A program made the translations under genes and the position numbers. Under the pieces are notes generated by a model that saw only the letters and a list, made by a program, of their open reading frames with translations, was not told where the DNA came from and made no database searches. This document shows positions 270 to 34,419 of a DNA stretch of 64,000 bases, one piece after another. The stretch is taken from IMG/VR virus record IMGVR_UViG_3300023174_000039, positions 62,001 to 126,000 of that record; one strand, 5' to 3'. Within the stretch, counting starts at the first letter, position 1; each line of letters opens with the position of its first letter.

Positions 270-662
270 ATGGCATACTCACAAAAAGTTGTAGACCACT
301 ACGAAAACCCACGCAACGTGGGTTCCTTCTCCAAGGACGACACTGACATTGGCACAGGCATGGTAGGTGCTCCTGCCTGCGGTGATGTAATGAAATTGCA
401 GATCAAAGTTGTAGATGGAATAATTACAGATGCACGATTTAAAACATATGGCTGCGGGTCAGCCATTGCATCAAGTTCATTGATCACTGAAATGGTCAAA
501 GGCATGACACTAGATAATGCTTCACAAATTAAAAACTCAGAAATTGCTGAAGAACTAGCACTACCTCCTGTAAAAATACACTGTAGTATTCTTGCAGAAG
601 ATGCTATCAAAGCCGCAGTTGAAGACTACAGAAAGAAACATGACACAACGCATCTTAATTGA
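270..662 (+). CDS. iscU: Fe-S cluster scaffold protein IscU
   Basis: MAYSQKVVDHYENPRNVG, GAPACGDVM, TYGCGSAIAS, LPPVKIHC; true ATG at 270. Confidence 0.97.
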   Translation: MAYSQKVVDHYENPRNVGSFSKDDTDIGTGMVGAPACGDVMKLQIKVVDGIITDARFKTYGCGSAIASSSLITEMVKGMTLDNASQIKNSEIAEELALPPVKIHCSILAEDAIKAAVEDYRKKHDTTHLN

Positions 663-11049: not shown

Positions 11050-11052
11050 CAC

Positions 11053-12902: not shown

Positions 12903-12922
12903 AATAGCCCAAAAATTCACTC

Positions 12923-12952
12923 AAAAATGTGGCTTTTTAGCCACATTTTTTT
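12923..12952 (+). terminator. hairpin/palindrome AAAAATGTGGCT-TTTT-AGCCACATTTTT (terminator or operator)
   Basis: Perfect 12-bp inverted repeat followed by Ts, immediately before a promoter. Confidence 0.7.
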
Positions 12953-13008
12953 GGTTGACCAATAATTCCCCATTTGCTATAATACTTGTATAGTAATTAA
13001 AAAGGAGT
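12951..13008 (+). promoter_or_regulatory. phage early sigma70 promoter cassette, copy 1
   Basis: TTGACC(12955)-17-TATAAT(12978), then SD AAGGAG. Confidence 0.9.
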
Positions 13009-13013
13009 TAGCA

Positions 13014-13289
13014 ATGCGAGCACTTTCTACATTTATTGACAACAAAAACCGTTATGCCAGTCTGTTCCGAGGCCAGCGTACAGAACCCTTGTACGAAGTT
13101 CAAACAGTCGCTGGTCGCATGCGTGTGGCCAAAATGATTGATTCAGACCTGAGCCCAGAGAATCTTTCTTGCGATGGTGAATTGCCCAGAGCAGAAGTTA
13201 ACAGACGCTACCGCGAACTCACAGCGGCCGCCCGAGATCTTATTAAATTAGACCCTTCAATGGCTCAACACATGTACGAATTTGGTTGA
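13014..13289 (+). CDS. early hypothetical protein
   Basis: LSPENLSCDGE motif; SD AAGGAG; stop lies inside the next -35. Confidence 0.75.
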   Translation: MRALSTFIDNKNRYASLFRGQRTEPLYEVQTVAGRMRVAKMIDSDLSPENLSCDGELPRAEVNRRYRELTAAARDLIKLDPSMAQHMYEFG

Positions 13290-13337
13290 CCAATAAATCC
13301 CAATTTGTTATAATACTTGTATAGTAACTAAAAGGAG
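13282..13337 (+). promoter_or_regulatory. phage early sigma70 promoter cassette, copy 2
   Basis: TTGACC(13286)-17-TATAAT(13309), SD AAGGAG. Confidence 0.9.
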
Positions 13338-13343
13338 TCCTGA

Positions 13344-13616
13344 ATGAACGTCAAAGAAATTAATTCTGCTATTATGTTTGGTAATCTCACCAATGACGAA
13401 CTGTCTACAGTAATTGATGCTGTGAAGTTTGCTCGTTCTCAACTTACTCAACAAAAGAAACGTATTTTTTCAATTGGTGATTCCGTAAAGTTCACCAGCA
13501 ATCGCAACGGCCTAACCTACGTGGGCACCGTGCGCAAGGTCAAAATCAAATTTGTTCTGGTTAACACACCTGGCGGCCTGTTCAATGTACCGGCCAACAT
13601 GTTGGAGGCAGCATGA
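13344..13616 (+). CDS. early hypothetical protein (SH3/KOW-like C-terminus)
   Basis: IGDSVKF...GTVRKVKIK...NVPANML. Confidence 0.7.
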   Translation: MNVKEINSAIMFGNLTNDELSTVIDAVKFARSQLTQQKKRIFSIGDSVKFTSNRNGLTYVGTVRKVKIKFVLVNTPGGLFNVPANMLEAA

Positions 13617-13783
13617 CCATCAAGCCCTTTCGCATCTGGCTTACCGATGTATGGCGAGACAATTGTGAAGAGAACGATGGCTGGGGTCAGCCTAGAATGA
13701 CCATGCCAGAATATTTTGCAAAATACAAGTGGTGGCTCAAACGTGAGTACCAGTATCAAAAAGGAGTTAGACGTGGGTCTTGA
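13613..13783 (+). CDS. small hypothetical protein (56 aa, not in ORF track)
   Basis: MTIKPFRIWL...YFAKYKWWLKREY; ATGA overlap with upstream gene. Confidence 0.65.
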   Translation: MTIKPFRIWLTDVWRDNCEENDGWGQPRMTMPEYFAKYKWWLKREYQYQKGVRRGS

Positions 13784-14177
13784 TATGTATGCATATGTGG
13801 CCGCTAGAGCAGACCAGCAACGTGAATTCTACGATGGGTGTGAGCTCAAGGACGGTGAATACACCAATCCCAATGTAACACAACCACGTGAGATCGCTTA
13901 CTGGCGTAAACATCCTAACCTGCATGGCTGGATGCAAAAACTTTGGGAATCACGTGGTAACTCTGGCGACTTTAATGGTGATGAACTTGAGCTAACATAC
14001 GACGATCTTGAAATATTAGAACTTGATGTTATTGCTGGCACACTGCCTGGCACCACAGGATTCTTTTTTGGTAATGACGCCGATGACCACTACAGGGAAC
14101 AGGATCTTGAGTTCATTAAGAATGCTCGAGCAGAGTTGTTTATGGGTTTAAAAGTGTTTTATAATAGTTCCTGGTAA
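13773..14177 (+). CDS. conserved phage hypothetical protein
   Basis: GTG start after AGGAG; MGLDMY...YWRKHPNLHGWM...GFFFG...YNSSW. Confidence 0.75.
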   Translation: MGLDMYAYVAARADQQREFYDGCELKDGEYTNPNVTQPREIAYWRKHPNLHGWMQKLWESRGNSGDFNGDELELTYDDLEILELDVIAGTLPGTTGFFFGNDADDHYREQDLEFIKNARAELFMGLKVFYNSSW

Positions 14178-14189
14178 TCAAGTAAATAT

Positions 14190-15563
14190 ATGAATGAAAC
14201 AAACTTCTCAGACCCAAGGTTCAGCGGGATAATGGCGGCAGGTTGGATCCGCGATCTCGAAAGCTCGGACAGCCGTATACACAAAGAAAAAACAATTGAA
14301 AAGGCCTTGATGGCAGCCAAACTAGGCAGTGCCGATGCACAGGCCTTCTTGTTCAACTGTTACCAAGCCTACAATCCTTTCTATGTGTTTGGCGTTCGAC
14401 AAGTGCCAGAAACTCAAGGGTTGACTGGCCAACCAAACCATTGGCCTGGATTTTGGGCCTTGCTAGAAAGTCTGCGTACTCGTAGTATCACTGGCAATCG
14501 CGCAAGAGAAGCAATCGAAACTTGCAGTCAGATGTTTGACTCAGAAGAGTGGAATGGACTGGCTCGACGTGTGTTAATCAAAGACTTGCGATGCGGTATC
14601 ACAGACAAAACGCTCAACAAAGTACTGAGCAAAACAGAATACAAAATTCCCGTGTTCAGTTGCCAACTAGCACAAGACTCTACGGACCATCCCAAAAAGC
14701 TCAAAGGCATCAAGCGCCTTGAGTGCAAGCTAGATGGTGTACGTGTGTTGGCAGTGGTGTCAGGTGATGCGTGTACCTTGTACAGTCGCAATGGCAAAGA
14801 GTTTGAGAACTTCCCACAGATTGCTGACTTCATTGAAGAGCATCGTAAATCTTTTCAACACAGCTCGGGGTTCGGTGGACAGTTTGTGTTAGATGGTGAG
14901 ATTGTGGGCAAGAATTTTCAAGACTTGATGAAACAGGCTCAACGCAAGAGCAATGCCAAAACAACCAACATGGTTTATCATGTGTTTGACATCTTGCCTC
15001 TGACCGAGTTCCGTGAAGGCTTTTGTAATTTGCAACAGCACAAACGTATTGATTTGCTGAAACGTGCTCAAGCAACGTTGCCGGAAAAAGGTTGTGTGCA
15101 GATCATGCCTGGAATGGATGTGGACCTGGACACCGCAGAAGGACATGATGTCATGCGCAGATTTGCCGAAGCTTCAGTAGAAGAAGGTTACGAAGGCATC
15201 ATGATCAAGAGCATGGATGCACCTTATGAATGCAAACGCAGTGACTTTTGGATGAAATGGAAACCCACTATCACAGTTGATCTCGATATTGTGGGTTTTG
15301 AAGAAGGTACTGGTCGCAATGCAGGCCGGTTGGGTGCTATAATATGTGAAGGGGAAGACAGTGGGCGAAAAATTCGTGTTAATGTTGGCAGCGGCTTCAG
15401 CGATAGCGATCGTGATGAGTATTGGCTCAACCGGGATACACTTCTTGGTAACGTGGTTGAAGTCGAAGCTGACGTTGTTACCCAAAATCAAGACGGATCA
15501 TATAGCCTGAGATTCCCTCGCTTTATGAGATTTCGTGGATTTGAACCAGGAGAAAAACTTTGA
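14190..15563 (+). CDS. ATP-dependent DNA ligase
   Basis: ECKLDGVR (KxDG), LDGEI, EGIMIK, WMKWK, SLRFPRF. Confidence 0.96.
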   Translation: MNETNFSDPRFSGIMAAGWIRDLESSDSRIHKEKTIEKALMAAKLGSADAQAFLFNCYQAYNPFYVFGVRQVPETQGLTGQPNHWPGFWALLESLRTRSITGNRAREAIETCSQMFDSEEWNGLARRVLIKDLRCGITDKTLNKVLSKTEYKIPVFSCQLAQDSTDHPKKLKGIKRLECKLDGVRVLAVVSGDACTLYSRNGKEFENFPQIADFIEEHRKSFQHSSGFGGQFVLDGEIVGKNFQDLMKQAQRKSNAKTTNMVYHVFDILPLTEFREGFCNLQQHKRIDLLKRAQATLPEKGCVQIMPGMDVDLDTAEGHDVMRRFAEASVEEGYEGIMIKSMDAPYECKRSDFWMKWKPTITVDLDIVGFEEGTGRNAGRLGAIICEGEDSGRKIRVNVGSGFSDSDRDEYWLNRDTLLGNVVEVEADVVTQNQDGSYSLRFPRFMRFRGFEPGEKL

Positions 15564-23782: not shown

Positions 23783-24241
23783 ATGACAAAAACTCTCACC
23801 CTTCGTTCTTTCGATATTCCCGCAATTCACAAATTTGGTATCGGGTTCGATAACATGTTTGATGAACTCATGCGTGTGAGTGCCCAACAAGGCAGCACCA
23901 ACTACCCACCTTATGATATTGTACAAGTCAACGATGACGAATACATGATCAGTGTGGCTGTGGCTGGATTTGGGTACGATGATCTCTCAGTGACCAAGGA
24001 TAAAAAGATTTTAGTTATCGAAGGCACACACAGTCGTGAAACTGTGGAAAATGAAGATTCAACTGCAAAATACCTGCACAAAGGAATCAGTGAGCGTAGT
24101 TTCCGTAGAGAATTTCAATTGGCGGATCATGTGGAAATTACCGGAGCACACCTTGAACTTGGTATCCTAAGTGTTCACTTAAAACGTGAAATACCTGAAG
24201 AAGCCAAGCCAAAGACCATTGCTATCACATACACTTCCTAA
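23783..24241 (+). CDS. small heat shock protein Hsp20 (IbpA-like)
   Basis: IGFD..FD, NYPPYDI, AVAGF, YLHKGISERSF.R.F.LAD. Confidence 0.96.
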   Translation: MTKTLTLRSFDIPAIHKFGIGFDNMFDELMRVSAQQGSTNYPPYDIVQVNDDEYMISVAVAGFGYDDLSVTKDKKILVIEGTHSRETVENEDSTAKYLHKGISERSFRREFQLADHVEITGAHLELGILSVHLKREIPEEAKPKTIAITYTS

Positions 24242-24296: not shown

Positions 24297-24605
24297 ATGT
24301 CACAATCAGAAACACGTACAAAAATTAAACCAAGTGAACAACTCAAAGAGCCACCAATGTACAAGGTCATCTATCTAAATGATAACCAAACCACAATGGA
24401 ATTTGTGATCGAAACCTTGATTGAATTTTTTAATTACAACACAGACACAGCGTTTACCATCACAGAAGACATTCACAATGCTGGATCAGCATGTGTTGCG
24501 GTGTTGCCATACGAGATTGCCGAACAAAAAGGTATTGAAGTAACCCTGGCAGCCAGAAATAATCAGTATCCTTTGCAGATCAAACTTGAGCCTGATCAGG
24601 CCTAA
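24297..24605 (+). CDS. clpS: ClpS N-degron adaptor
   Basis: PPMYKVIYLNDNQTTMEFV...IHNAG...YEIAEQK...YPL. Confidence 0.93.
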   Translation: MSQSETRTKIKPSEQLKEPPMYKVIYLNDNQTTMEFVIETLIEFFNYNTDTAFTITEDIHNAGSACVAVLPYEIAEQKGIEVTLAARNNQYPLQIKLEPDQA

Positions 24606-25393
24606 AACTCCACAGTGATTCGGCGAGGGTAGTACACATGCTGTCCGTACTCGGTATTGCCGCGGCCACGACAATGATTGAGATATCGGATGTTGTCGCG
24701 AATCTGATCAATAGGACTATGATAGTGCCCAAAACACCAGGTGTGTATTTTTCTTTCGGTATCTACCATGTGCGCCTGGCGCATGAGTTGGTTGCCCATG
24801 GTGTTGCATCTCCAGGTGCCTGCTAGATTGATGTCGTGACTGATCAGCACAGGATCAGGCACAGTGTGTGTTATCATTACAATTTTTTTAACATCCTGGT
24901 GTGTTTGTAATCGTTTCACAGAGTTGATCATGTACATGGCATCAGTTGTGGCCATCCTACCAATGGTTTTTACAGTGTCGCCGGTTAATTTGAATTTGTC
25001 TTGATACCACTGAGCACTTTGTGTGGGATCAATGGTTGGGTCAAAATCAAAACCAAACCAGCCATTGGTTCCCAGTATAGCAACACCGTCAATCACAACC
25101 ACATTGTCCTGTAGGTAAACCAAATTGGGGATCTTTTCAAGTCGTGTTACCAAATCAGCATAACTGTAGGTCAGGTTGTTGAGATAATTGGTATGTTCAT
25201 CATTGCCATCAATGTAGAAAACAGCCTGGTAATTTTTGCCCAGATGTGTAAGAACCTCCACTAGATCATTACGATCCATGGCTATGTCCCCTGCAACCAC
25301 AGCAACAGGGCTAGTGGCAATACCCGTCCAGTCAAATCGTGGCCAGGTATCAACGTGTAAATCAGAAATTAAATCAAAGCTAAATGTCATCAT
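24602..25393 (-). CDS. metallophosphoesterase
   Basis: SDLH, AGD, GNDEH, THTVP, FGHYH. Confidence 0.85.
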   Translation of the reverse strand: MMTFSFDLISDLHVDTWPRFDWTGIATSPVAVVAGDIAMDRNDLVEVLTHLGKNYQAVFYIDGNDEHTNYLNNLTYSYADLVTRLEKIPNLVYLQDNVVVIDGVAILGTNGWFGFDFDPTIDPTQSAQWYQDKFKLTGDTVKTIGRMATTDAMYMINSVKRLQTHQDVKKIVMITHTVPDPVLISHDINLAGTWRCNTMGNQLMRQAHMVDTERKIHTWCFGHYHSPIDQIRDNIRYLNHCRGRGNTEYGQHVYYPRRITVEF

Positions 25394-25971: not shown

Positions 25972-26832
25972 GTGAAAATAGCACGAGTTTTAATGGTCGG
26001 GGCACACCGCATTGGTGCCGCATGTTTGAGTCTGCAGTTTGATCATAATCTTAATAAATTTGACAAGACTTATGTGGTATGTCCACTTCCTGGCGATCGA
26101 CTACAAAAAGTATTTGAAAAATACAACATTGACACCCAAGGATTTGAATATATCAATGACTATGACCTAGTGAAAGAATTTCCTTTGATTTCCAATTGGT
26201 ATCTCACAGGAGAGTATCGTGGCACTTGGTTGATACAGCAGGCCATGAAGTTTTACATGCTTGATAAAATTGATGCAGATGTGGTATTCATCCACGATGC
26301 TGATAGTTTTTGTGTTGAGCCCTATGAGTGCGTGGTAGATGATAAATTAAATTTGTTTTATCTGCCAGAAACCACACATGCCTGGGAATACTACCGAGCA
26401 TTTGAGAATGTAACAGGATTGTCGAGACAGAGTACGGACTGTTATATTACAGAAATGATGCCAGTTTTTAAACATGACTGGAACAATTTAAAAACACTGA
26501 TTGCCAGCAAGTTTGACCAACCTTGGTCCAATGTGTTGATTGAGCAAACCCCTTGGGATCATGTGGGCAACATCAAATGGTTCAGCGAGTATGAATTCTT
26601 GGGCAACTGGACCACTAGTCAACACAGCGATTATATTCGAACTCAACAACACAGATACGATTATAAAAAGCTAGAAGATCTTACCTATCAAGATTTCCCT
26701 ACCGGCATCAACTGTGTGAGTGATAAAAACCCATTTGGTAATATATTACCTTTTGATTATGGCACCGATTCAGTGATGAACTTGGATACCGTGCTGGATC
26801 GTTTACAGCGCCTGGGCATATTACCTGATTAA
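25972..26832 (+). CDS. DUF6492-like (GT-A-like) protein
   Basis: WLIQQAMK, DAD, TEMMP, FSEYE.LG. Confidence 0.65.
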   Translation: MKIARVLMVGAHRIGAACLSLQFDHNLNKFDKTYVVCPLPGDRLQKVFEKYNIDTQGFEYINDYDLVKEFPLISNWYLTGEYRGTWLIQQAMKFYMLDKIDADVVFIHDADSFCVEPYECVVDDKLNLFYLPETTHAWEYYRAFENVTGLSRQSTDCYITEMMPVFKHDWNNLKTLIASKFDQPWSNVLIEQTPWDHVGNIKWFSEYEFLGNWTTSQHSDYIRTQQHRYDYKKLEDLTYQDFPTGINCVSDKNPFGNILPFDYGTDSVMNLDTVLDRLQRLGILPD

Positions 26833-28122
26833 CTGCTCAACCTCGTCCTGGTGTTGCATGCTTTCAAGTAATATTGCATCAGCCAATTTGAATTTTTCTG
26901 GACTATGAGTCCATGCCTGCCGAAACTCCAGCCAGTAACGCCCAGTTTTGTATTGTTCAATGATACTCAGTCCACGATTCAGGTTGTTGATAAATTCATC
27001 AAATATACTCTGTTGCCATCGATCACTGAAAAATAATTTTTTATTGTAATCAGCAATCTCATACAGGCGGTGCCACAGCTGATGTTTTTGCTCTAGCGGC
27101 AACTGACTAATTCTTTTCATTTCGGCACATATGCTGGCTAACCGTTTTGCAGGATCTTGAATGGCATCGTAGCTTTCGTCAATCATGCCAGCAAATGTTT
27201 TAAATCCATAGTTTCTAAGATATTGCAAACTACCTGCTGTGGCAGCCAATATAAATGGTCGTCCACATGCAATTGGCCGCAAGGACTTTTCGGTCAGGTG
27301 CCATCGTGCATCGTCAAACAATGTTTCTAGTACTACTTCTATAGCAGTAGTGCTATAGTCCAGAGTGGTGTAATCTGCGCTGGCAGTGGCGTCAACTTTG
27401 CATGGTTCAAAATAATTTTCCAAGTCTCTAGATTGTACAGTGAAGTCTGAGTTTTTGGGCTGAAAGGTAGTATAGTGCCCACTCTCACAATGTGAATTAA
27501 ATGTCATTTGACATTGATGTTGTAAATTGTGTTCTACCAACAGTTCGGTAAATTTCAGTCTATATTCCCGGGTACCGGACCAGGCACGATTGTACACTAA
27601 AAAATCTTTTTTGATTTGATTAAAGTTTGGCACCAGTCCGTAATCATTGGGTGCGTATCGATACCAGTCTGCGGCAATGGCAGCATGTGCCCACCAATAT
27701 ACTCCGACAAAATCTGCATTTTCGTACTGTGTTAGATTACTACTGTTCTGTTCACTGTGTACCAGCAACGTTTTATCATACACACTGTGTCTGGTGCCAA
27801 TGATTGAACGGAGATTTTGGTCAGTGACTAGTTTTTTTATTCTAGTCATGTTGTCCGGGTTATTGGCTATAGAGGGTGCATGCTTGACAAAATAATCCAT
27901 CATGATGTCATGTGTGTATTGATCAAAAAACAGCGGCTCTTGATCATGACACAATGCACCAGGCTTTTCAATCTGATGCCGCCATCCGTGCTGTTTAAAA
28001 TTGTACAAGGGCAACAGATCTACCAGATTTTTTGAGCCATGGGGATAGAAGCGATAAATTAATATGTCATGGTTGCATAAACCGTCTAAGTGATTGTATA
28101 ATCTATCTAAAGGAACACTCAT
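26821..28122 (-). CDS. phage glycosyltransferase-like hypothetical protein
   Basis: HDQEP, VVLET...LTEK..RPIA...PFI..A..GSL.YLR.YGF.TF...IDESYD; ATG at 28122. Confidence 0.6.
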   Translation of the reverse strand: MSVPLDRLYNHLDGLCNHDILIYRFYPHGSKNLVDLLPLYNFKQHGWRHQIEKPGALCHDQEPLFFDQYTHDIMMDYFVKHAPSIANNPDNMTRIKKLVTDQNLRSIIGTRHSVYDKTLLVHSEQNSSNLTQYENADFVGVYWWAHAAIAADWYRYAPNDYGLVPNFNQIKKDFLVYNRAWSGTREYRLKFTELLVEHNLQHQCQMTFNSHCESGHYTTFQPKNSDFTVQSRDLENYFEPCKVDATASADYTTLDYSTTAIEVVLETLFDDARWHLTEKSLRPIACGRPFILAATAGSLQYLRNYGFKTFAGMIDESYDAIQDPAKRLASICAEMKRISQLPLEQKHQLWHRLYEIADYNKKLFFSDRWQQSIFDEFINNLNRGLSIIEQYKTGRYWLEFRQAWTHSPEKFKLADAILLESMQHQDEVEQLIR

Positions 28123-28125
28123 AGT

Positions 28126-29364
28126 ATGAAAAAAATTGGATTTATTGGTATTGGTAAACTTGGCCTTGATTGCGCTGAAGTTATGGCAGAGAAGCACATG
28201 GTGCGGGGTTATGATATTTACCCACGTACCAGTGACACTGTAAAAGTTTGTGGCATTGACGAGCTGGTAAAAATGAGCGAATGGATCTTTATTGCTGTGC
28301 CAACCCCGCATGCAGAAGGATACGATGGATCCGTGCCATCAAGCCACATGACTCCCCGAGACTTTGGACATGATGCTGTGATTGATGCCATCAATAAAAT
28401 CAATCAACATGCTCAGACCAGCAAGAAGGTTGTGCTTATCTCTACTGTGCTACCAGGCACCACACGTGCCAAGTTTGTTACATTGCTGGACAAGAAACAT
28501 CAGTTCCTGTATAACCCTTATCTAATTGCCATGGGCAGTGTGAAGTGGGATATGGCCAATCCAGAGATGGTCATCATTGGCACCGAAGATGGTGAACTCA
28601 CAGGCATTGCTGGCGAACTGATTGAATTGTACAAGACCATCATGAACAACGATCCTCGTTATGAGATTGGCACATGGGACGAATGTGAAGCCATCAAGAT
28701 CTTCTATAACACATACATTTCTGCCAAGGTTGGCATTGTGAACATGATCCAGGACTTTGCCATGAAGATTGGCAACATCAATGTTGATGTTGTTACCAAT
28801 GCCCTGGCACGAAGCACCATGCGATTGCAAGGTCCCAAATACATGACAGCAGGCATGGGAGATGCAGGTGCATGCCATCCACGAGATAATATTGCCCTGC
28901 GTTGGTTGGCAGAACACTACGAAGTGGGCTATGACCTGTTTGACACAATCATGCATGCTCGTGAAATACAGGCCAAGAATCTGGGCTTGTTCTTGGTTGA
29001 ACAAGCCCGAGCCACAGGATTACCAATTGTGATTCATGGCAAAGCCTACAAGCCCGACGTTGAATACTGTATTGGTTCATACTCTACCTTGGTTGGACAC
29101 TATGTAAAAGAAGCAGGCATGCCTGTGGTATATGTTGATCCGCTGGCAGACAACCAGGATGAAGTGGTTGCGGAAGTCACAGGACCTGCTGTGTTTTTAT
29201 GGGCACACAACCGCAAGATCACCTACGAGTACACAGGCGAACAACAAGACACACAGGCCTATTGTGATATCAAACCAGGTTCGGTTATTGTTGATCCTTG
29301 GCGTAAACTGGCATCTACCGCAGATTACCGAGTAGTACACTATGGCAACACACGTGGTCAGTAA
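28126..29364 (+). CDS. UDP-glucose/GDP-mannose dehydrogenase family protein
   Basis: GIGKLG, AVPTP, STVLPG, IKIFYN, GACHPRD, AYKP, DP. Confidence 0.92.
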   Translation: MKKIGFIGIGKLGLDCAEVMAEKHMVRGYDIYPRTSDTVKVCGIDELVKMSEWIFIAVPTPHAEGYDGSVPSSHMTPRDFGHDAVIDAINKINQHAQTSKKVVLISTVLPGTTRAKFVTLLDKKHQFLYNPYLIAMGSVKWDMANPEMVIIGTEDGELTGIAGELIELYKTIMNNDPRYEIGTWDECEAIKIFYNTYISAKVGIVNMIQDFAMKIGNINVDVVTNALARSTMRLQGPKYMTAGMGDAGACHPRDNIALRWLAEHYEVGYDLFDTIMHAREIQAKNLGLFLVEQARATGLPIVIHGKAYKPDVEYCIGSYSTLVGHYVKEAGMPVVYVDPLADNQDEVVAEVTGPAVFLWAHNRKITYEYTGEQQDTQAYCDIKPGSVIVDPWRKLASTADYRVVHYGNTRGQ

Positions 29365-29860
29365 ATACAATCTTCCAGTATTCTGGAACGATGAGTACAA
29401 GACTCTTGACTATGTTCAAGAGCCTTTTAATGACCCTGTTAGTGTAGAACGTTGGCTTGAACAGGGCTACACCAACAAAATCACAGGCGATCTGTGCGAC
29501 ATGCGTCACCGTTTGCCCGTATGGACAGAAAGATTTATCAAAATTTATACTGAACTGGGATGGAAGGACATTGGACTTGCATTCTATCGCATGCCCACAG
29601 GAACAGTGATGCCGGTTCACAGTGACTTGTACAAACGCTATGTTGAACTGTTTGACTTGAAAGGCAAGGAACAGTCAATTCGCCGTGCGTTGGTTCTGAT
29701 GGAAGACTGGAAGTCGGGGCACTATCTTGAAGTCAATGGGCATCCTTATGTGAATTGGCAAGCAGGAACCACAGTGGAGTGGCAATATGATACTCCGCAC
29801 TCTGCAGCCAATATTGGTCTAGAAGATCGTTATACATTGCAAATTACTGGACACATATGA
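29342..29860 (+). CDS. 2OG-Fe(II) oxygenase-like protein
   Basis: PVHSD...PHSAANIG..DR..LQITG. Confidence 0.75.
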   Translation: MATHVVSKYNLPVFWNDEYKTLDYVQEPFNDPVSVERWLEQGYTNKITGDLCDMRHRLPVWTERFIKIYTELGWKDIGLAFYRMPTGTVMPVHSDLYKRYVELFDLKGKEQSIRRALVLMEDWKSGHYLEVNGHPYVNWQAGTTVEWQYDTPHSAANIGLEDRYTLQITGHI

Positions 29861-30780
29861 TAAGTTCACACAATGAATGGGACCCATTAAAAAAGATTGT
29901 GGTAGGCACAGCTGATTATGCCAACTGGCCATTACACGATCCTGTTTTTTCAAAGGAAAGTGAAAAGACCAGCTGGAAAGAAACTCCAGTACCCAGTGGC
30001 CCTGTGCCACAATGGATCATTGATGAAGCCAACGAAGACCTTGACGGCCTGGCCAAGATTTTAACAGATCAGGGTGTGGAAGTTGTGCGCCCAGAACCCT
30101 TGAACTTTCAAACACACGATGGCATGTACAATTACTGTCCCAGAGATAGATTGTTGATTGTTGGGGACAAGGTCATTGATACTGCCATGATGTATCCCTG
30201 CAGAGACATGGAACTACAATGCTATCACGAAATACTTGGAGATGCAGAAGTAATCACCATGCCTAGAGATCAAGGTCTTGTGCTAGATGCAGCCAACATA
30301 CTACGTCTTGGACCCAATAAGATGTTGTACTTGGAAAGCGCAAGCGGCAACAAAGCTGCCTACTATTGGTTGTTGGCCAACTTACCTCCCACCACCAGCA
30401 TTGAGCTGTGTAATTTTTACGCTGGAGTACACATTGATTCGACCATTGTGCCCTTGCGTGAAGGTGTTGTCATGTTGAATGCCAGCCGTGTGAGTTTTGA
30501 CAACGTTCCTCGAGCATTTGACGGCTGGCAAAAGATCTGGGTTCGTGACGTGGTAGCACAAGGATTTCATGAATACCCTTATGCATCAAAATGGATTGCA
30601 ATGAACCTGTTGGTAGTGGACCCAGAAACTGTTATAGTGGACCGGCACCAAACCGAATTGATCAAAACCTTGGAAAGTTACCGATTCCGAGTAATTCCGC
30701 ACGAATTACGTCATAGTAGGACCTTGGGCGGTGGATTTCATTGTGTTACATTAGACCTAATTCGGCAAGCAAGAAGTTGA
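29857..30780 (+). CDS. amidinotransferase (glycine/inosamine-phosphate amidinotransferase family)
   Basis: HNEWDPL, CPRD, DAAN, HIDST, GGGFHCVT. Confidence 0.92.
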   Translation: MISSHNEWDPLKKIVVGTADYANWPLHDPVFSKESEKTSWKETPVPSGPVPQWIIDEANEDLDGLAKILTDQGVEVVRPEPLNFQTHDGMYNYCPRDRLLIVGDKVIDTAMMYPCRDMELQCYHEILGDAEVITMPRDQGLVLDAANILRLGPNKMLYLESASGNKAAYYWLLANLPPTTSIELCNFYAGVHIDSTIVPLREGVVMLNASRVSFDNVPRAFDGWQKIWVRDVVAQGFHEYPYASKWIAMNLLVVDPETVIVDRHQTELIKTLESYRFRVIPHELRHSRTLGGGFHCVTLDLIRQARS

Positions 30781-30805
30781 CTTTTTGCACAATTGAGTAT
30801 ATAAT
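30777..30805 (+). promoter_or_regulatory. sigma70 promoter for uvsE (probably leaderless mRNA)
   Basis: TTGACT-17-TATAAT with ATG 6 nt later; -35 contains the upstream TGA. Confidence 0.8.
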
Positions 30806-30811
30806 ACTCAT

Positions 30812-31840
30812 ATGAACACACGAATTGGCTTTTGTTGCAAGTGGCTTAATGATCCGTACGAATGTGGCGGCATGAAAGTTAACGCAGTGGACCGTGACCT
30901 AAACGGCAGATCAACTACCATGAGATGGCTTCGCGAACATGCGTCCGAAGCCGACCAGCGTCAATGGGACATCATGAATCACAATGCGTCAGCGGCTGTG
31001 AGAATGATTGAACGTGTGGCCACACTACCGCCTGAACGTAGAATGGTACGACTTGGCTCAGAAATGCTACAAGGCTACACCGAACCCAACTGGATTGCTT
31101 GGTGGCAACGTCAGGAAATACAAGATCACTGTGCAAAGATCTTTGCTCCAATTGGTGAAGCCGCACGTAAATATGGTGTGCGTTTGAGCTTTCATCCTGG
31201 CCAGTTTTGTGTGCTAGCAAGCGAAGCAGATGAAATTGTAGAACGTAGCATACTGGAATTTGAATATCACGTGGATATGGCACGTTGGATGGGTTATGGT
31301 AGCACATGGCATGACAACGGGTTCAAGATCAACGTACACTTGAGCGGTAAAGGTGGACCCGCTAAATTCTTGCGTACCTTGGGTAGACTCAGTCCCGAAG
31401 CAAGAAACTTAATTACCATCGAGAATGATGAGATGACAAATGGACTTGACACTACTTTGGCTGTGGCTCAGCATGTGGCTCTTGTATTGGACCTACACCA
31501 CCACTGGATTAACTCGGGGGAATACATCTCCGCGCAGGACAGTCGTGTCCAGCGGGTTATTGACTCTTGGCGCGGCGCTCGTCCTGCACTTCATTACAGT
31601 GTTAGTCGCGAGGACCTTTTGGTTGACCATGACCGAGGAACTAGACCCGATCTTGCTGAACTTCTTGCTAGAGGTTATAAGAAACAGAAACTTCGAGCAC
31701 ACAGCGACTTCTATTGGAATGACGCTGTGACCGACTGGGCATTGACTTTTGCTGATGCATTTGATATTCAATGCGAAGCCAAAGGCAAAAACCTTGCCAG
31801 TGAACAAGTTTATGAACAATATATTTCTCAGCACTCTTGA
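30812..31840 (+). CDS. uvsE: UV damage endonuclease UvsE/UvdE
   Basis: IGFCCK, RLSFHPGQF, INVH, IENDE, DLHHH, HYS, AHSD, EAK.KN. Confidence 0.93.
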   Translation: MNTRIGFCCKWLNDPYECGGMKVNAVDRDLNGRSTTMRWLREHASEADQRQWDIMNHNASAAVRMIERVATLPPERRMVRLGSEMLQGYTEPNWIAWWQRQEIQDHCAKIFAPIGEAARKYGVRLSFHPGQFCVLASEADEIVERSILEFEYHVDMARWMGYGSTWHDNGFKINVHLSGKGGPAKFLRTLGRLSPEARNLITIENDEMTNGLDTTLAVAQHVALVLDLHHHWINSGEYISAQDSRVQRVIDSWRGARPALHYSVSREDLLVDHDRGTRPDLAELLARGYKKQKLRAHSDFYWNDAVTDWALTFADAFDIQCEAKGKNLASEQVYEQYISQHS

Positions 31841-32118: not shown

Positions 32119-32760
32119 ATGAAAACCATTGCCCTATTTGTACACCAACCCAAATGCTCTGTACAAAGTGCTAACGGAATTATCGAAGCATTGAGCCCGC
32201 ACTATCGATTCAAAATCTTTACCCGCCACGAAGTTGAGCGGGATTTTTTTGACGATGTGGATGCTGTTTGTTTCCCCGGTGGCATAGGCGATGCCAGCAG
32301 TTTTGATTACTTGACGCGAGAGAATATCACCAAGATTCAAGCCTTTGTGAGCACAGGCGGAGCATATATTGGCATCTGCATGGGTGCGTATTGGGCCAGC
32401 AGCAACTACTTTGACATACTCAAGCATGTTGATGCCAAACAGTACATGCGCAGACCCGGTACAGACACACGCCGACCACATGCTAAAAACATTGACATAA
32501 CCTGGAACAATGATCCAATGAAGATGTTTTGGTATGATGGGTGTGCTCTGGTTGGCGATGAGTCAAAGTTTACAACTGTGGCCCGCTATACAGGAAACAA
32601 CGACCCAATGGCCATCATACAAAACCGCATAGGACTAATAGGGTGTCATCCTGAAAGCACACCGCATTGGTATGAATCTTACAGTTGGATGCGTAGTCGA
32701 TATCATGATGGTTACCATCACGCATTATTATTAAATTTTGTCAACAGTTTATTAGTGTAA
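32119..32760 (+). CDS. BPL_N / class I glutamine amidotransferase-like protein
   Basis: FPGG, YIGICMGAY, GCHPE catalytic triad. Confidence 0.85.
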   Translation: MKTIALFVHQPKCSVQSANGIIEALSPHYRFKIFTRHEVERDFFDDVDAVCFPGGIGDASSFDYLTRENITKIQAFVSTGGAYIGICMGAYWASSNYFDILKHVDAKQYMRRPGTDTRRPHAKNIDITWNNDPMKMFWYDGCALVGDESKFTTVARYTGNNDPMAIIQNRIGLIGCHPESTPHWYESYSWMRSRYHDGYHHALLLNFVNSLLV

Positions 32761-32789: not shown

Positions 32790-32793
32790 CTTG

Positions 32794-33606
32794 ATGAAGA
32801 CATATCGCTCAATCTTTGTTAGTGATGTCCACCTTGGAACCAAAGATTGTCAAGCCGATCGTCTCAACAACTTTCTCAAACACAACTCCTGTGATACCTT
32901 ATACCTAGTAGGTGATATCATTGACGCCTGGCGCATACAACAAAACCGCTGGCGTTGGAAGCAGAGCCACACCAACGTTGTTCGTCGGGTGTTAGGTCAT
33001 GCCAAGCGTGGTACTAGAGTTGTTTATGTAGCAGGCAACCATGACGAGTTCCTGAGACCAATGATACCATATGGTTTCAGTTTTGGACTTGTAGAAATAC
33101 ACAATCAAATTGAACATATAGGTGCCGACGGCAAGCACTATCTAGTCACTCACGGCGACTTGTTTGATGGTATAACAAGACTGGCACCATGGATAGCATT
33201 CTTAGGAGACAAAGCGTATGACATCGTTCTTACTATCAACTCTAAGTACAATTGGTTACGTCATCGCATGGGTTTTGGGTACTTTAGCATTAGCCAGTTT
33301 CTTAAGCACCGAGTTAAAAAAGCTGTAGACTTTATGTTCAAGTTTGAAGAAAATCTAGCAAACTATTGCAAGAAGCGTGGGTACGATGGAGTAATCTGTG
33401 GACACATACATCATGCAGAAATAAAAGAAATCAACGGTGTTATGTATATGAACGACGGAGACTGGGTTGAATCGTGTACTGCCTTAGTAGAACACTGGGA
33501 CGGACATTGGGAAATAATTACCTGGACCAAGGAGACAGACAATGTGGGTATTGATACTACTGGCAGTTCACTTAAACGACTCAAAAGACGTGCCGGGCCG
33601 AATTGA
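32794..33606 (+). CDS. PlcP-like phospholipase C (LpxH-like metallophosphoesterase)
   Basis: SDVHLGT..CQA, VGDIID.W, GNHDEFLR, HGDLFD, GDKAY, CGHIH, NDGDWVESCTAL. Confidence 0.85.
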   Translation: MKTYRSIFVSDVHLGTKDCQADRLNNFLKHNSCDTLYLVGDIIDAWRIQQNRWRWKQSHTNVVRRVLGHAKRGTRVVYVAGNHDEFLRPMIPYGFSFGLVEIHNQIEHIGADGKHYLVTHGDLFDGITRLAPWIAFLGDKAYDIVLTINSKYNWLRHRMGFGYFSISQFLKHRVKKAVDFMFKFEENLANYCKKRGYDGVICGHIHHAEIKEINGVMYMNDGDWVESCTALVEHWDGHWEIITWTKETDNVGIDTTGSSLKRLKRRAGPN

Positions 33607-33708
33607 ATTGCTATTTCAGGATCGCGCCACATGTGAACAAAGTCTGCAGAGCATGACATATTGGTTGAAGTTTAACCAATTCAAAATTGAAGGAAGGTGT
33701 GTGAAAAA

Positions 33709-34419
33709 ATGAAACTCAGCGATAAAATTACTATTGTAGTACCTTGCAAGAATGAAGAAAACTATATTCATCATTTGTTGGATGCCTTGCGTGGCCAAGA
33801 CATTGGCAACACCAGAATCATCATAGCTGACTGTTCCACTGACGCAACTAGACAAGTGATACAAGATAATAGTGCAGGACTGAATGTTGAAATCATTGAT
33901 GGTGGTCCCGTGAGTATAGCCAAGAACCGCGGAGCAAGATTAGCAACCACTCCATACATCTTGTTTATTGATGCCGATGTACGCTTCTTTAAACCCACAG
34001 TTATTCAAGATGCTGTCAACGCCATTGAACAAAAGAACTTGGATTTAATAGGATTGAAAATTAAATGTTATGACCAAGATCCAAGAGCAAAGATAGGGTT
34101 TATTATTTTTAATACTATAAATCAAGCATTGAAATATTTCTCACCTTTTGCAGTTGGTGCATTCATGCTCACACGCAAAGATCGGTTTGAAGAATTTGGC
34201 GGTTTCCCTGAACAGCTTAGTACCTCTGAGGACTACTTCCTATCAAAGAAATACAATCCCAGAAAGTTTAAAATCATCCGACACCACCTTGGGCAAGACT
34301 CGCGCAGATTCAAGAAGATGGGATATTTAGGTATGGCCAAGTATTTGGTGAAAAATTTTGTCAATCGTAATAATCAAGCATATTGGCACAAATCAGATCA
34401 TAATCGTTACTGGATGTAA
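33709..34419 (+). CDS. glycosyltransferase family 2
   Basis: VVPCKNEE, D.STD, AKNRGA, FIDAD, GGF, ED, SRR. Confidence 0.9.
   Translation: MKLSDKITIVVPCKNEENYIHHLLDALRGQDIGNTRIIIADCSTDATRQVIQDNSAGLNVEIIDGGPVSIAKNRGARLATTPYILFIDADVRFFKPTVIQDAVNAIEQKNLDLIGLKIKCYDQDPRAKIGFIIFNTINQALKYFSPFAVGAFMLTRKDRFEEFGGFPEQLSTSEDYFLSKKYNPRKFKIIRHHLGQDSRRFKKMGYLGMAKYLVKNFVNRNNQAYWHKSDHNRYWM

What the first reader, a model, noticed from the sequence alone, without database searches (positions are those of the whole stretch)
25972..30780. Phage biosynthetic cluster: nucleotide-sugar dehydrogenase + 2OG-Fe(II) oxygenase + amidinotransferase + two GT-like proteins
Seen: UGD-family, oxygenase and amidinotransferase genes overlap in one operon. 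It is divergent from a GT-like gene (start codons only 3 nt apart) and next to a DUF6492-like protein. Known: amidinotransferases make guanidino groups (creatine, streptidine). Inference: synthesis of an unusual guanidinylated or uronic glycan for virion, host-surface or DNA modification.
Basis: partly seen in the sequence, partly recalled or inferred. Interest (0 to 1): 0.6.

Follow-up and report, generated by a model that had tools for sequence, protein, structure and literature searches.

The report
Phage guanidino-sugar tailoring gene cluster
A widespread group of freshwater giant phages carries a tightly conserved enzyme set (sugar dehydrogenase, iron oxygenase, arginine-dependent amidinotransferase, with a glycosyltransferase alongside) that most likely builds a sugar carrying a guanidino group; no phage product of this kind has been described, and its target is unknown.

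Summary
Window 25972-30780 lies in a 331,654-bp virus record. It carries a DUF6492 gene, a divergent 433-aa gene, and an overlapping operon: UGD-family dehydrogenase, 172-aa oxygenase, 307-aa amidinotransferase.

- **Amidinotransferase:** matches streptomycin enzyme StrB1 at E 3e-66, catalytic Asp/His/Cys invariant.
- **Oxygenase:** confident 2OG-Fe(II) fold, invariant HxD...H...R.
- **433-aa protein:** no sequence family, but a GT-B glycosyltransferase fold. The best match is T4 DNA beta-glucosyltransferase (Z 11.8).
- **Dehydrogenase:** keeps the catalytic Cys/Lys/Asn/Asp but has invariant NPYLIAMG where the family has NPEFLREG.

The three-gene operon keeps its order in 78-80 of 80 related viral loci, and the GT-B gene is present in 72. 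DUF6492 is in only 4, so it is accessory.

A second phage clade (330 contigs, including Synechococcus phage S-SCSM2R) places a short DegT-type aminotransferase, the oxygenase and the amidinotransferase together beside several glycosyltransferases. This genome encodes that aminotransferase elsewhere, next to GalE.

Best reading: oxidation, transamination, then arginine-dependent amidination of a nucleotide sugar, followed by glycosyl transfer. This mirrors streptidine chemistry. The acceptor (virion or host glycoconjugate, or DNA) is unresolved, and no functional study was found. I class it as a new variant of a known kind, interest 0.6.

The parts
25993..26832 (+). DUF6492-family protein. The ORF is open from GTG 25972; the likely start is ATG 25993. 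It is an accessory neighbour, not a core member.
   Evidence: Pfam PF20102 at E 4e-7, 29.8 bits against a cut-off of 22.9. The ESM Atlas holds the sequence from residue 8 and finds only viral DUF6492 clusters. A homologue is present in 4 of 80 related loci. Its 3' end overlaps the 3' end of the next gene by 12 nt.
26821..28122 (-). 433-aa soluble glycosyltransferase with a GT-B fold and no described sequence family. It is transcribed divergently from the operon.
   Evidence: No hit in Pfam, PHROGs, NCBIfam or PDB sequences. AlphaFold2 pLDDT 93.9. Every top Foldseek hit is a GT-B enzyme. The VIA-align top hit is T4 beta-glucosyltransferase 1c3j (Z 11.8, 270 residues aligned, rmsd 4.2); T4 alpha-glucosyltransferase scores Z 9.9 and POGLUT and fucosyltransferases score Z about 10. 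Present in 72 of 80 loci at 28-65% identity. 4001 cluster representatives in metagenomes. pI 6.1, no transmembrane segment.
28126..29364 (+). Nucleotide-sugar dehydrogenase of the UDP-glucose/GDP-mannose dehydrogenase family, in a virus-specific clade. First gene of the operon.
   Evidence: PF03721 at 53 bits and PF00984 at 52 bits, both above cut-off. phrog_9148 at 2e-84. TIGR03026 at 124 bits, below its cut-off of 189.8. Catalytic Cys250 within GDAGACHPRD is kept, as are Lys191 and Asn195, but NPYLIAMG replaces NPEFLREG in 19 of 19 homologues. 55% identical to Synechococcus phage Bellamy gp227 and 46.5% to Pelagibacter phage HTVC008M gp162.
29342..29860 (+). 172-aa minimal 2-oxoglutarate/Fe(II)-dependent oxygenase. 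Second gene of the operon; overlaps the first by 23 nt.
   Evidence: Invariant H93-x-D95, H153 and R163 in 30 sequences. pLDDT 91.8. Foldseek top hit is P. putida prolyl-4-hydroxylase at E 1e-5. The VIA-align top rows, at Z 13.0 to 11.8, are all 2OG oxygenases: PiuC, P4H, PHDs, AsqJ, ALKBH3, PolD. Present in 80 of 80 loci. Homologous to S-SCSM2R ORF308 (hhalign probability 99.6%).
29857..30780 (+). 307-aa L-arginine-type amidinotransferase, closest to StrB1. Third gene of the operon; overlaps the second by 4 nt (ATGA).
   Evidence: phmmer against PDB: StrB1 1bwd 3e-66, HsvA 8e-32, AGAT 1e-31, SxtG 1e-25. D144, H192 and C296 align with StrB1 D179, H227 and C332, and D97 with D108; all are invariant in 21 sequences. 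215 viral contigs encode a relative.
30777..30805 (+). Best sigma-70-like promoter match of the region, between the amidinotransferase stop and the UvdE start. It marks the likely downstream boundary of the operon.
   Evidence: 11 of 12 hexamer matches (TTGACT, 17 nt, TATAAT). This is a consensus match only, and the promoter types this phage uses are unknown.

Best explanation
The core is a four-gene module: three co-translated enzymes and a divergently transcribed GT-B glycosyltransferase. It tailors a sugar-type small molecule, most likely a UDP-hexose, so that it carries a guanidino group, and then transfers it to an acceptor inside the infected cell.

Proposed order (inferred):
1. The UGD-like dehydrogenase and/or the 2OG-Fe(II) oxygenase oxidise the sugar, creating a carbonyl and possibly a further hydroxyl or acid.
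2. A short DegT-type PLP aminotransferase converts the carbonyl to an amine. It is encoded at genome 203768-204397, next to a GalE epimerase.
3. The StrB1-like amidinotransferase takes the amidino group from L-arginine onto its active-site Cys296 and passes it to that amine, giving a guanidino sugar and ornithine.
4. The GT-B enzyme attaches the sugar to a macromolecule.

This is the dehydrogenase, aminotransferase, amidinotransferase logic of streptidine biosynthesis, moved onto a phage glycosylation system.

Shown: enzyme families, catalytic residues, folds and conserved linkage. Inferred: substrate, order of steps and acceptor. For the acceptor I rank a virion or host glycoconjugate slightly ahead of phage DNA.
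For: **Enzyme identity**
- Amidinotransferase with all catalytic residues.
- 2OG oxygenase triad and fold.
- Nucleotide-sugar dehydrogenase family domains with the catalytic Cys.
- GT-B fold.

**Operon**
- Overlapping genes.
- Same order in 78-80 of 80 loci at 66-94% amidinotransferase identity, with the GT-B gene in 72 of 80.

**Link to a sugar aminotransferase, seen in three lineages**
- Second clade of 330 viral contigs, 80 analysed: the short DegT-like gene lies within 6 kb of the amidinotransferase in 74. The oxygenase homologue does so in 66. Each of four glycosyltransferase genes does so in 65-70. The UGD-like gene sits directly downstream in 11 (isolate S-SCSM2R).
- Contig L107 has UGD-like, oxygenase, short DegT, FolE and amidinotransferase contiguous. 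It is syntenic with genome 190-205 kb of this phage.
- This genome has the short DegT gene next to a GalE equivalog (300 bits against a cut-off of 262). So do 4 of 4 near-complete relatives.
- The short DegT keeps the PLP-lysine motif.

**Nearest characterised homologue**
- StrB1 amidinates an amino-cyclitol phosphate, a sugar-like small molecule (established knowledge; similarity).

**Location**
- All proteins are soluble and lack transmembrane segments, so the chemistry is cytoplasmic.
Against: - No substrate or product has been observed, and no RNA run holds the region.
- In this genome the aminotransferase lies about 112 kb from the operon, so its participation is inferred from other lineages.
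- The dehydrogenase lacks both Glu residues of the NPEFLREG motif and falls below the NCBIfam cut-off, so its substrate and the extent of oxidation are unknown.
- The role of the oxygenase is not specified by any evidence. Its fold neighbours include protein, nucleic-acid and small-molecule oxygenases at tied Z scores.
- Cellular amidinotransferase homologues (34-42% identity) sit in amino-acid or polyamine-like natural-product contexts, not sugar ones: AMP-binding enzymes, ornithine decarboxylase-type enzymes, class-III aminotransferase, ABC exporters. One exception lies next to a GlmS-like enzyme.
- The GT-B gene is missing next to the operon in 8 of 80 loci.
- To my knowledge no natural guanidino sugar attached to a glycan, protein or DNA is known. 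This rests on memory, not on a test.
Confidence: 0.5

Rival explanations
1. DNA hypermodification. The module decorates the phage's own DNA. One version: the GT-B enzyme acts like the T4 glucosyltransferases on a hydroxylated base, with the small oxygenase possibly serving as the DNA-base hydroxylase. Another version: the amidinotransferase guanidinylates an amine-bearing base such as a 7-deazaguanine derivative. Either would protect the genome from host nucleases.
For: - In a search of 48,161 chains, the best structural match of the GT-B protein is T4 beta-glucosyltransferase (Z 11.8); T4 alpha-glucosyltransferase ranks sixth (Z 9.9).
- The cluster lies among DNA-metabolism genes: ribonucleotide reductase, ligase, UvdE and phosphoesterases.
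- In L107, FolE sits between the oxygenase and the amidinotransferase.
- This genome has FolE, QueD-like and QueE-like genes beside the short DegT gene.
- ALKBH3 and AlkB are among the oxygenase's fold neighbours (Z 12.0 and 10.9).
- Bacillus phage SP-15, whose DNA carries a glucuronate-containing hypermodification (from memory), also encodes a UGD.
Against: - The genome shows no thymidylate-synthase-type hydroxymethylase, TGT/DpdA or QueC. The Tet/JBP search also found nothing, but its control rang in none of the 14 control genomes, so that result is uninformative.
- The Z margin over protein O-glycosyltransferases and fucosyltransferases is only about 1.6 to 2.
- The GT-B family is acidic to neutral (median pI 6.1).
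- In the second clade the amidinotransferase travels with three to five GT-A-type glycosyltransferases, including GT25. That looks more like oligosaccharide assembly.
Confidence: 0.2
2. A free guanidino metabolite. The operon makes a diffusible or intracellular small molecule that is never attached by a glycosyltransferase. Candidates are an amidinated aminocyclitol or amino-sugar phosphate, an amidinated polyamine for DNA condensation in the large capsid, or an arginine-derived compound. It would act on the host, on competitors or on DNA packaging.
For: - Every characterised relative (StrB1, AGAT, HsvA, SxtG) makes a free small molecule (established knowledge).
- Cellular homologues lie in natural-product-like clusters with adenylating enzymes, decarboxylases, aminotransferases and exporters.
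- The operon persists without the adjacent GT-B gene in 8 of 80 loci.
- The authors of the S-SCSM2R paper call their copy an 'antibiotic synthesis gene', without a test (PMC12801897).
- The genome holds four amidinotransferase-fold genes, which suggests broad guanidino chemistry.
Against: - No exporter or kinase lies in the phage cluster.
- Glycosyltransferases are linked to the amidinotransferase in both phage clades, in 72 of 80 and 65-70 of 80 loci.
- A nucleotide-sugar dehydrogenase, GalE and a DegT-family enzyme all point to NDP-sugars.
Confidence: 0.2
3. There is no common pathway. The genes are independent auxiliary genes that happen to be neighbours in a gene-dense phage genome.
For: - The flanks are mosaic: DUF6492 and the GT2 gene at 33697-34419 each occur in only 4 of 80 loci, and insertions occur between the amidinotransferase and UvdE.
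- Close relatives share a core genome, so linkage within one clade is weak evidence by itself.
Against: - The stop and start codons overlap.
- The order is the same in 78-80 of 80 loci, down to 57% dehydrogenase identity.
- The oxygenase-amidinotransferase adjacency recurs in a distant clade at 37% amidinotransferase identity and 29% oxygenase identity.
- It recurs again in L107, with the dehydrogenase.
Confidence: 0.05

Closest known systems
Streptidine branch of streptomycin biosynthesis (dehydrogenase, StsC aminotransferase, StrB1 amidinotransferase; Streptomyces griseus)
   Same: StrB1 is the closest characterised protein (E 3e-66, catalytic D/H/C conserved). The same three-step logic applies: oxidise, transaminate with a DegT/StrS-family enzyme, then amidinate from L-arginine.
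   Different: No inositol-type dehydrogenase or kinase is present. The phage uses a UDP-glucose-dehydrogenase-family enzyme plus a 2OG oxygenase, a truncated (about 200 aa) DegT-like protein, and glycosyltransferases unrelated to the Str enzymes. The amidinotransferase is about 40 residues shorter than StrB1, with a gap corresponding to StrB1 residues 139-172. The producer is a lytic-type jumbo phage, not an actinomycete.
Phage and giant-virus glycosylation systems (T4 alpha/beta-glucosyltransferases on hmC DNA; mycobacteriophage and chlorovirus/mimivirus virion glycosylation with virus-encoded sugar-nucleotide enzymes)
   Same: Virus-encoded nucleotide-sugar tailoring enzymes next to glycosyltransferases. 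The GT-B protein's best fold match is T4 beta-glucosyltransferase.
   Different: No hydroxymethylase is present. An amidinotransferase has not been shown to take part in any of these systems. The GT-B protein has no detectable sequence relationship to GT63 or GT72 (10% identity).
Gene cluster of Synechococcus phage S-SCSM2R ORF301-310, and Campylobacter phage CP220/CPt10 amidinotransferase clusters
   Same: S-SCSM2R has homologues of the oxygenase (hhalign 99.6%) and the amidinotransferase (37% identity) adjacent, together with the short DegT-like gene (44% identity) and glycosyltransferases. CP220 has an amidinotransferase (24% identity) beside two GT-A genes.
   Different: These are annotated only, as 'antibiotic synthesis genes' or 'possible glycine amidinotransferase', and were never tested (PMC12801897, PMC2853527). 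They use GT-A glycosyltransferases and radical SAM enzymes rather than the GT-B protein. The UGD-like gene is adjacent in only 11 of 80 loci of that clade. CP220 gp085 is not an oxygenase homologue.
UGD-like gene clusters of Synechococcus phage Bellamy and Pelagibacter phage HTVC008M
   Same: The same virus-specific dehydrogenase clade (55% and 46.5% identity, same NPYLIA(M/Q)G motif), again next to glycosyltransferase and sugar-tailoring genes.
   Different: The partners there are a NadE-like amidating enzyme, a carbamoyltransferase and a methyltransferase. This genome has homologues of those genes, but scattered. No amidinotransferase is present in those clusters.

Membership tests
Amidinotransferase (StrB1/AGAT family, guanidino-group-modifying enzyme superfamily) | Full-length sequence similarity to structurally characterised members | tested here: met
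   1bwd StrB1 at 3e-66 over residues 1-303; AGAT at 1e-31, HsvA at 8e-32, SxtG at 1e-25.
Amidinotransferase (StrB1/AGAT family, guanidino-group-modifying enzyme superfamily) | Catalytic Cys-His-Asp triad and arginine-binding Asp | tested here: met
   C296, H192, D144 and D97 align with StrB1 C332, H227, D179 and D108 and are invariant in 21 phage sequences. The residue roles come from published StrB1/AGAT structures, recalled from memory.
Amidinotransferase (StrB1/AGAT family, guanidino-group-modifying enzyme superfamily) | Curated family model above threshold | tested here: not met
   Pfam PF02274 reaches only E 0.056, 12.9 bits against a cut-off of 22.8. NCBIfam gives only a weak dimethylargininase hit. 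The models are insensitive for this clade; the direct PDB match is decisive.
Amidinotransferase (StrB1/AGAT family, guanidino-group-modifying enzyme superfamily) | Transfer of an amidino group from L-arginine to an amine acceptor | not testable with these tools
   Needs an enzyme assay.
UDP-glucose/GDP-mannose dehydrogenase family | NAD-binding N-terminal domain and central domain | tested here: met
   PF03721 at 53.2 bits (cut-off 27) and PF00984 at 51.8 bits (cut-off 25.4). GxGxxG motif at residues 8-13.
UDP-glucose/GDP-mannose dehydrogenase family | Catalytic Cys with Lys/Asn/Asp | tested here: met
   GDAGAC250HPRD aligns with GYGGSCFPKD. K191 and N195 are kept. Conserved in 19 of 19 homologues.
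UDP-glucose/GDP-mannose dehydrogenase family | NPEFLREG motif with its two Glu residues (recalled from memory as involved in the second oxidation or thioester hydrolysis) | tested here: not met
   NPYLIAMG(S/T) in 18 of 19 viral homologues and NPYLIAQGT in the other.
UDP-glucose/GDP-mannose dehydrogenase family | Curated nucleotide-sugar dehydrogenase model (TIGR03026) and C-terminal UDP-binding domain | tested here: not met
   TIGR03026 at 124 bits against a cut-off of 189.8. PF03720 was not detected in the window protein, and scored 25.9 against a cut-off of 30 in the L107 homologue.
2-oxoglutarate/Fe(II)-dependent oxygenase | Double-stranded beta-helix fold | tested here: met
   Model pLDDT 91.8. 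135 Foldseek hits at E <= 0.001, led by 2OG oxygenases and cupin-fold proteins. VIA-align Z 13.0 with 153 residues aligned at rmsd 3.0; the top 50 rows are almost all solved 2OG oxygenases.
2-oxoglutarate/Fe(II)-dependent oxygenase | HxD/E...H iron triad and a basic residue for the 2OG C5 carboxylate | tested here: met
   H93, D95, H153 and R163 are invariant in 30 sequences. Assigning R163 to 2OG binding rests on its position only.
2-oxoglutarate/Fe(II)-dependent oxygenase | Curated sequence family above threshold | tested here: not met
   PF05118 at 16.3 bits against a cut-off of 22.6.
GT-B glycosyltransferase | Two Rossmann-like domains with the GT-B arrangement | tested here: met
   Model pLDDT 93.9. 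All listed Foldseek hits are GT-B enzymes (best E 1.3e-3, probability 0.99). VIA-align gives 26 chains at Z >= 8, most of them GT-B enzymes.
GT-B glycosyltransferase | Membership of a described sequence family (Pfam/CAZy-type) | tested here: not met
   No hit in Pfam (even at E 10), NCBIfam, PHROGs, PDB sequences or phage tblastn. The Atlas neighbours are unnamed viral clusters.
T4-type DNA glucosyltransferase system | A hydroxymethyl-pyrimidine handle made by a phage hydroxymethylase or a TET/JBP oxygenase | tested here: not met
   PF00303 is absent, with a valid control. PF12851 is absent, but its control rang nowhere, so that half is inconclusive.
Phage 7-deazaguanine DNA modification system | FolE, QueD, QueE and QueC plus the DpdA transglycosylase | tested here: not met
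   FolE-like, QueD-like and QueE-like genes are present, all below the equivalog cut-offs. QueC and TGT/DpdA are absent. A very divergent DpdA could escape PF01702.
DUF6492 | Pfam model above the gathering score | tested here: met
   29.8 bits against a cut-off of 22.9.

The most novel reading that the evidence does not exclude
A large, globally distributed group of freshwater jumbo phages, and a parallel clade of cyanophage-like viruses, attach an arginine-derived guanidino sugar to their own DNA, or otherwise carry a guanidinylated base. This would be a positively charged hypermodification of a chemical type never seen in nucleic acids. It would be made by a streptidine-like pathway and installed by a T4-BGT-like GT-B enzyme of a new sequence family.
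Probability: 0.15. Interest if true: 0.85.

Novelty: new variant of a known kind. Interest (0 to 1): 0.6.

Why it matters
Phage-encoded amidinotransferases have been noted in genome papers for 15 years, in Campylobacter phages and cyanophages, and in the papers found here they were simply labelled creatine or antibiotic genes. No functional test was found.

This analysis makes three points:
- They form conserved modules with a small 2OG oxygenase, a truncated sugar aminotransferase, a virus-specific UGD-like dehydrogenase and glycosyltransferases.
- The modules occur in at least 545 viral contigs across two clades.
- The gene content matches the chemical logic of streptidine biosynthesis.

If the product is a guanidino sugar on virions, host envelope or DNA, it would be a new kind of cationic glycan or nucleic-acid modification. 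That would bear on receptor masking, resistance to nucleases and DNA packaging. It would also provide a new enzyme set for making guanidinylated sugars.

The work also defines three families for biochemical study. The first is a GT-B family with no sequence annotation (4001 cluster representatives). The second is a UGD clade lacking the canonical Glu residues. The third is a roughly 200-aa DegT-like protein.

Tried and rejected
- **Near-identical DNA in isolated phages:** none found. tblastn with the GT-B protein also found nothing.
- **CP220 gp085 and HTVC008M gp163 as oxygenase homologues:** rejected (hhalign probability below 1%).
- **The 360-aa L107 protein and the 400-aa locus-B protein as GT-B433 homologues:** rejected.
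- **Carboxymethylcytosine (CmoX/CmoY) pathway as an explanation for the Bellamy-type cluster:** the paper mentions none of these enzymes.
- **Complete 7-deazaguanine DNA system:** rejected for lack of QueC and DpdA.
- **hmC/hmU route:** no thymidylate-synthase-type enzyme.
  - Five are phage-like contigs binned into MAGs.
  - One more, L107 (binned in a Legionellales MAG), carries the dehydrogenase and the oxygenase and is syntenic with this phage.
  - None of the remaining 16 cellular homologues (34-42% identity) has the dehydrogenase or the oxygenase nearby. The scan used only two peptide patterns, so absence is weak evidence.
- **Locus-B genes in the immediate flanks of the operon in close relatives:** none found.
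- **Expression evidence:** no RNA run holds the region. Laying contigs showed the same DNA in an independent freshwater study, in fragmentary pieces only.
- **Literature:** five full-text searches found no functional study of any phage amidinotransferase.
- **Big profile search:** not used, because family scans and folds had already assigned every protein.

Full report
**What is there**

The window is bases 62001-126000 of a 331,654-bp IMG/VR virus record estimated 95% complete. It has PHROG hits to a tail fibre, class I ribonucleotide reductase and ATP-dependent ligase, so it is a jumbo phage. Its DNA occurs in lake and freshwater metagenomes, including an independent study that holds 0.82 of the sampled words.

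The region contains five genes:

| Coordinates | Strand | Product | Length |
|---|---|---|---|
| 25972/25993-26832 | + | DUF6492 protein | 286 aa from GTG 25972; 279 aa from ATG 25993 |
| 26821-28122 | - | GT-B glycosyltransferase | 433 aa |
| 28126-29364 | + | UGD-like dehydrogenase | 412 aa |
| 29342-29860 | + | 2OG-Fe(II) oxygenase | 172 aa |
| 29857-30780 | + | amidinotransferase | 307 aa |

The divergent start codons are 3 nt apart. The three plus-strand genes overlap by 23 nt and 4 nt. The best sigma-70-like site of the region lies just after the amidinotransferase stop, ahead of the UvdE gene. That fits an operon of exactly three genes.

**Gene identities**

*Amidinotransferase.* It has no Pfam hit at default thresholds. 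It matches the solved inosamine-phosphate amidinotransferase StrB1 at E 3e-66 over its whole length, and AGAT, HsvA and SxtG at 1e-25 to 1e-31. D144, H192, C296 and D97 align with StrB1 D179, H227, C332 and D108, and are invariant in 21 phage sequences.

*Oxygenase.* It has only a sub-threshold PF05118 hit. An alignment of 30 homologues shows invariant H93-x-D95, H153 and R163. The AlphaFold2 model (pLDDT 91.8) matches 2OG-Fe(II) oxygenases by Foldseek (P. putida prolyl-4-hydroxylase, E 1e-5). An independent all-against-all alignment agrees (Z 13.0 to 11.8 for PiuC, P4H, PHDs, AsqJ, ALKBH3 and PolD). The fold is certain. The substrate class is not.

*Dehydrogenase.* It has the N-terminal and central domains of the UDP-glucose/GDP-mannose dehydrogenase family and belongs to phrog_9148. 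It keeps the catalytic Cys250, Lys191, Asn195 and Asp. The family's NPEFLREG motif reads NPYLIAMG in 18 of 19 viral homologues and NPYLIAQG in HTVC008M, so both Glu residues are lost throughout the clade. Cyanophage Bellamy is among the 18. It scores below the NCBIfam nucleotide-sugar dehydrogenase cut-off. It is therefore a distinct viral clade whose product may not be a simple uronic acid.

*433-aa protein.* It has no hit in any sequence library. Its model is very confident (pLDDT 93.9) and is a GT-B glycosyltransferase. Among 48,161 chains the best match is T4 DNA beta-glucosyltransferase (Z 11.8, 270 residues, rmsd 4.2). Next come protein O-glucosyltransferases and fucosyltransferases (Z about 10) and T4 alpha-glucosyltransferase (Z 9.9).

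*DUF6492.* It passes the Pfam threshold. Its fold was not tested.

All five proteins are soluble and acidic, with no transmembrane segment.

**Conservation**

- 215 IMG/VR contigs encode a close relative of the amidinotransferase.
- In the best 80 loci (66-94% identity), dehydrogenase, oxygenase and amidinotransferase are adjacent in the same order in 78-80.
- The GT-B gene sits divergently upstream in 72, but is much more variable (28-65% identity).
- DUF6492 and the nearby GT2 gene (33697-34419) each occur in only 4.
- The GT-B and oxygenase families have 4001 and 1574 cluster representatives in metagenomes. Among the best 120 listed for each, all are unnamed or 'hypothetical'.

The core is therefore four genes.

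**The module extends beyond the window**

Synechococcus phage S-SCSM2R carries an oxygenase homologue (hhalign 99.6%) directly upstream of a StrB1-like amidinotransferase (37% identity). The pair lies inside a run of glycosyltransferases that also holds a 195-aa DegT-family protein and a radical SAM enzyme.

Searching with that amidinotransferase found 330 further viral contigs. Counts within 6 kb of the amidinotransferase in the best 80:

| Gene | Loci (of 80) |
|---|---|
| Short DegT-like gene | 74 |
| Oxygenase homologue | 66 |
| Each of four glycosyltransferase genes | 65-70 |
| UGD-like gene, directly downstream, about 55% identical to the window's | 11 |

A third arrangement is contig L107. 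It is binned in a marine Legionellales MAG but is syntenic with genome 190-205 kb of this phage. Its order is UGD-like (54%), oxygenase (43%), short DegT (46%), FolE (68%), amidinotransferase (42%), all contiguous.

This genome encodes the same short DegT protein (209 aa, PLP-lysine motif kept) at 203768-204397, between a GalE equivalog and FolE. So do all four near-complete relatives tested.

The genome also holds:
- a full-length DegT aminotransferase with an SDR epimerase/dehydratase;
- homologues of the NadE-like enzyme, methyltransferase and carbamoyltransferase that flank the UGD-like gene in Bellamy and HTVC008M;
- three further amidinotransferase-fold genes, one preceded by an oxygenase paralogue.

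**Mechanism**

A dehydrogenase or oxygenase, a DegT/StrS-family aminotransferase and a StrB1-type amidinotransferase together follow the logic of streptidine biosynthesis: oxidise a hydroxyl to a carbonyl, transaminate, then amidinate from L-arginine (established pathway knowledge).

Here the enzymes are of nucleotide-sugar type (UGD family, GalE neighbour, DegT family), and they travel with glycosyltransferases in both clades. The most economical reading is a pathway to an NDP-activated guanidino sugar that a glycosyltransferase then transfers.

- Shown: families, catalytic residues, folds and linkage.
- Inferred: the substrate, the order of steps, the role of the oxygenase and the acceptor.

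**Which acceptor**

For DNA:
- the fold ranking of the GT-B protein;
- the DNA-metabolism neighbourhood;
- the FolE/QueD/QueE-like genes next to the short DegT gene.

Against DNA:
- no hydroxymethylase, QueC or DpdA, and no Tet/JBP hit, although that control was silent;
- a small Z margin;
- a non-basic GT-B family;
- the multi-glycosyltransferase architecture of the second clade, which includes GT25 and a large 2OG oxygenase. That architecture looks like oligosaccharide or protein glycosylation.

A free metabolite is also possible. All characterised relatives make small molecules, cellular homologues sit in natural-product-like clusters, and 8 of 80 loci lack the adjacent GT-B gene.

My estimates: about 0.5 for the guanidino-sugar glycosylation reading with the acceptor left open, 0.2 for DNA specifically, 0.2 for a free metabolite, and 0.05 for no common pathway.

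**Comparison with what is known, and novelty**

Each enzyme is a member, or a divergent member, of a known superfamily. The GT-B protein and the short DegT protein lack any described sequence family.

Phage amidinotransferases appear in the literature only as annotations. They are called 'possible glycine amidinotransferase' in CP220/CPt10 (PMC2853527) and 'antibiotic synthesis gene' in S-SCSM2R (PMC12801897). A global AMG survey treats the creatine pathway only by KEGG mapping (PMC11360552). No functional study was found in five searches.

The combination described here is not described in the papers I could search. It is a conserved oxygenase-amidinotransferase pair with a truncated sugar aminotransferase, a Glu-less UGD clade and glycosyltransferases, across at least 545 viral contigs. 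I class it as a new variant of a known kind (virus-encoded sugar tailoring and glycosylation).

**Limits**

- No expression data exist.
- The bacterial-genome scan used only two peptide patterns.
- The host is unknown. Two related contigs binned in a Haliscomenobacter MAG are only a hint.

Noticed in passing
outside the window: genome 166556-168965, 227459-228514, 251461-252486 (loci L116, L117, L118): The phage encodes three more amidinotransferase-fold proteins (best PDB hits AGAT 9e-10, HsvA 2e-6, StrB1 3e-13). One is preceded by a 238-aa paralogue of the small oxygenase and a sulfotransferase-like gene. One is followed, after a 222-aa ORF, by a radical SAM/SPASM enzyme, an arrangement reminiscent of Campylobacter phage CP220. 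In six related loci an AmT2-like gene lies 2-4 kb downstream of the operon.
   Followed up: partly
outside the window: genome 198919-209517 (locus L091): A second tailoring locus: twitch-domain radical SAM, two unknown genes (one with a weak GT-B signal), a GalE equivalog, short DegT, FolE-like, QueD/PTPS-like, a weak GT2, a methyltransferase (46% identical to Bellamy gp226) and QueE-like. The genome has no QueC or TGT/DpdA, so this is a 7-deazaguanine or pterin-type route without the known end steps.
   Followed up: partly
window 28126-29364 and homologues in L084, L085, L107: The virus-specific UGD clade (phrog_9148) replaces the family's NPEFLREG motif with NPYLIAMG (NPYLIAQG in HTVC008M) in 19 of 19 sequences while keeping the catalytic Cys. 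It may stop at the aldehyde, or use a nucleophile other than water.
   Followed up: partly
window 30777-30805 and 30812-31840: A near-consensus sigma-70-like promoter (11 of 12) lies directly upstream of a UV-damage endonuclease UvdE gene (Pfam 2e-30). UvdE follows the operon in 66 of 80 relatives, often after insertions of 0.3 to 6.5 kb.
   Followed up: no
window 23783-24241, 24602-25393, 32119-32760, 32791-33606, 33697-34419: The neighbours are an IbpA-like small heat-shock protein, two metallophosphoesterases, a class-I glutamine-amidotransferase-like protein (BPL_N/GATase) and a GT2 glycosyltransferase. The GT2 is present in only 4 of 80 relatives.
   Followed up: no
window 592-1539: A 315-aa ORF is 24% identical (E 2e-14) to the radical SAM protein ORF306 of the S-SCSM2R cluster.
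   Followed up: no
locus L122 (G003:C1:30320-30940): The short DegT homologue of a complete 364-kb relative (with direct terminal repeats) contains one in-frame TGA. It could be a pseudogene, a sequencing error or recoding.
   Followed up: no
loci L093-L097 and L107 (genome contigs): Contigs carrying this phage cluster are binned in MAGs labelled Haliscomenobacter (two contigs), Terrimicrobiaceae, Bacteroidetes UBA11400, Legionella and Legionellales. This reflects either viral contamination of MAGs or a weak host hint (Haliscomenobacter).
   Followed up: no
locus L104 (Paenibacillus turicensis DSM 14349), 9995-15436: A cellular StrB1-like amidinotransferase (38% identity) lies next to a GlmS-like SIS/glutamine-amidotransferase protein, a kinase-like protein, an NDK-like protein and an ABC-2 exporter. 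This may be an uncharacterised guanidino amino-sugar phosphate cluster.
   Followed up: no
window 28700-29130: Contigs laid from the lake samples show several co-occurring variants and summed depth peaks over the dehydrogenase gene. Many related phage strains appear to share this conserved segment in the same water.
   Followed up: no
outside the window: genome 243088-249231, minus strand: A 2047-aa ORF lies beside the ThyX, SDR and full-length DegT genes. It was not analysed.
   Followed up: no
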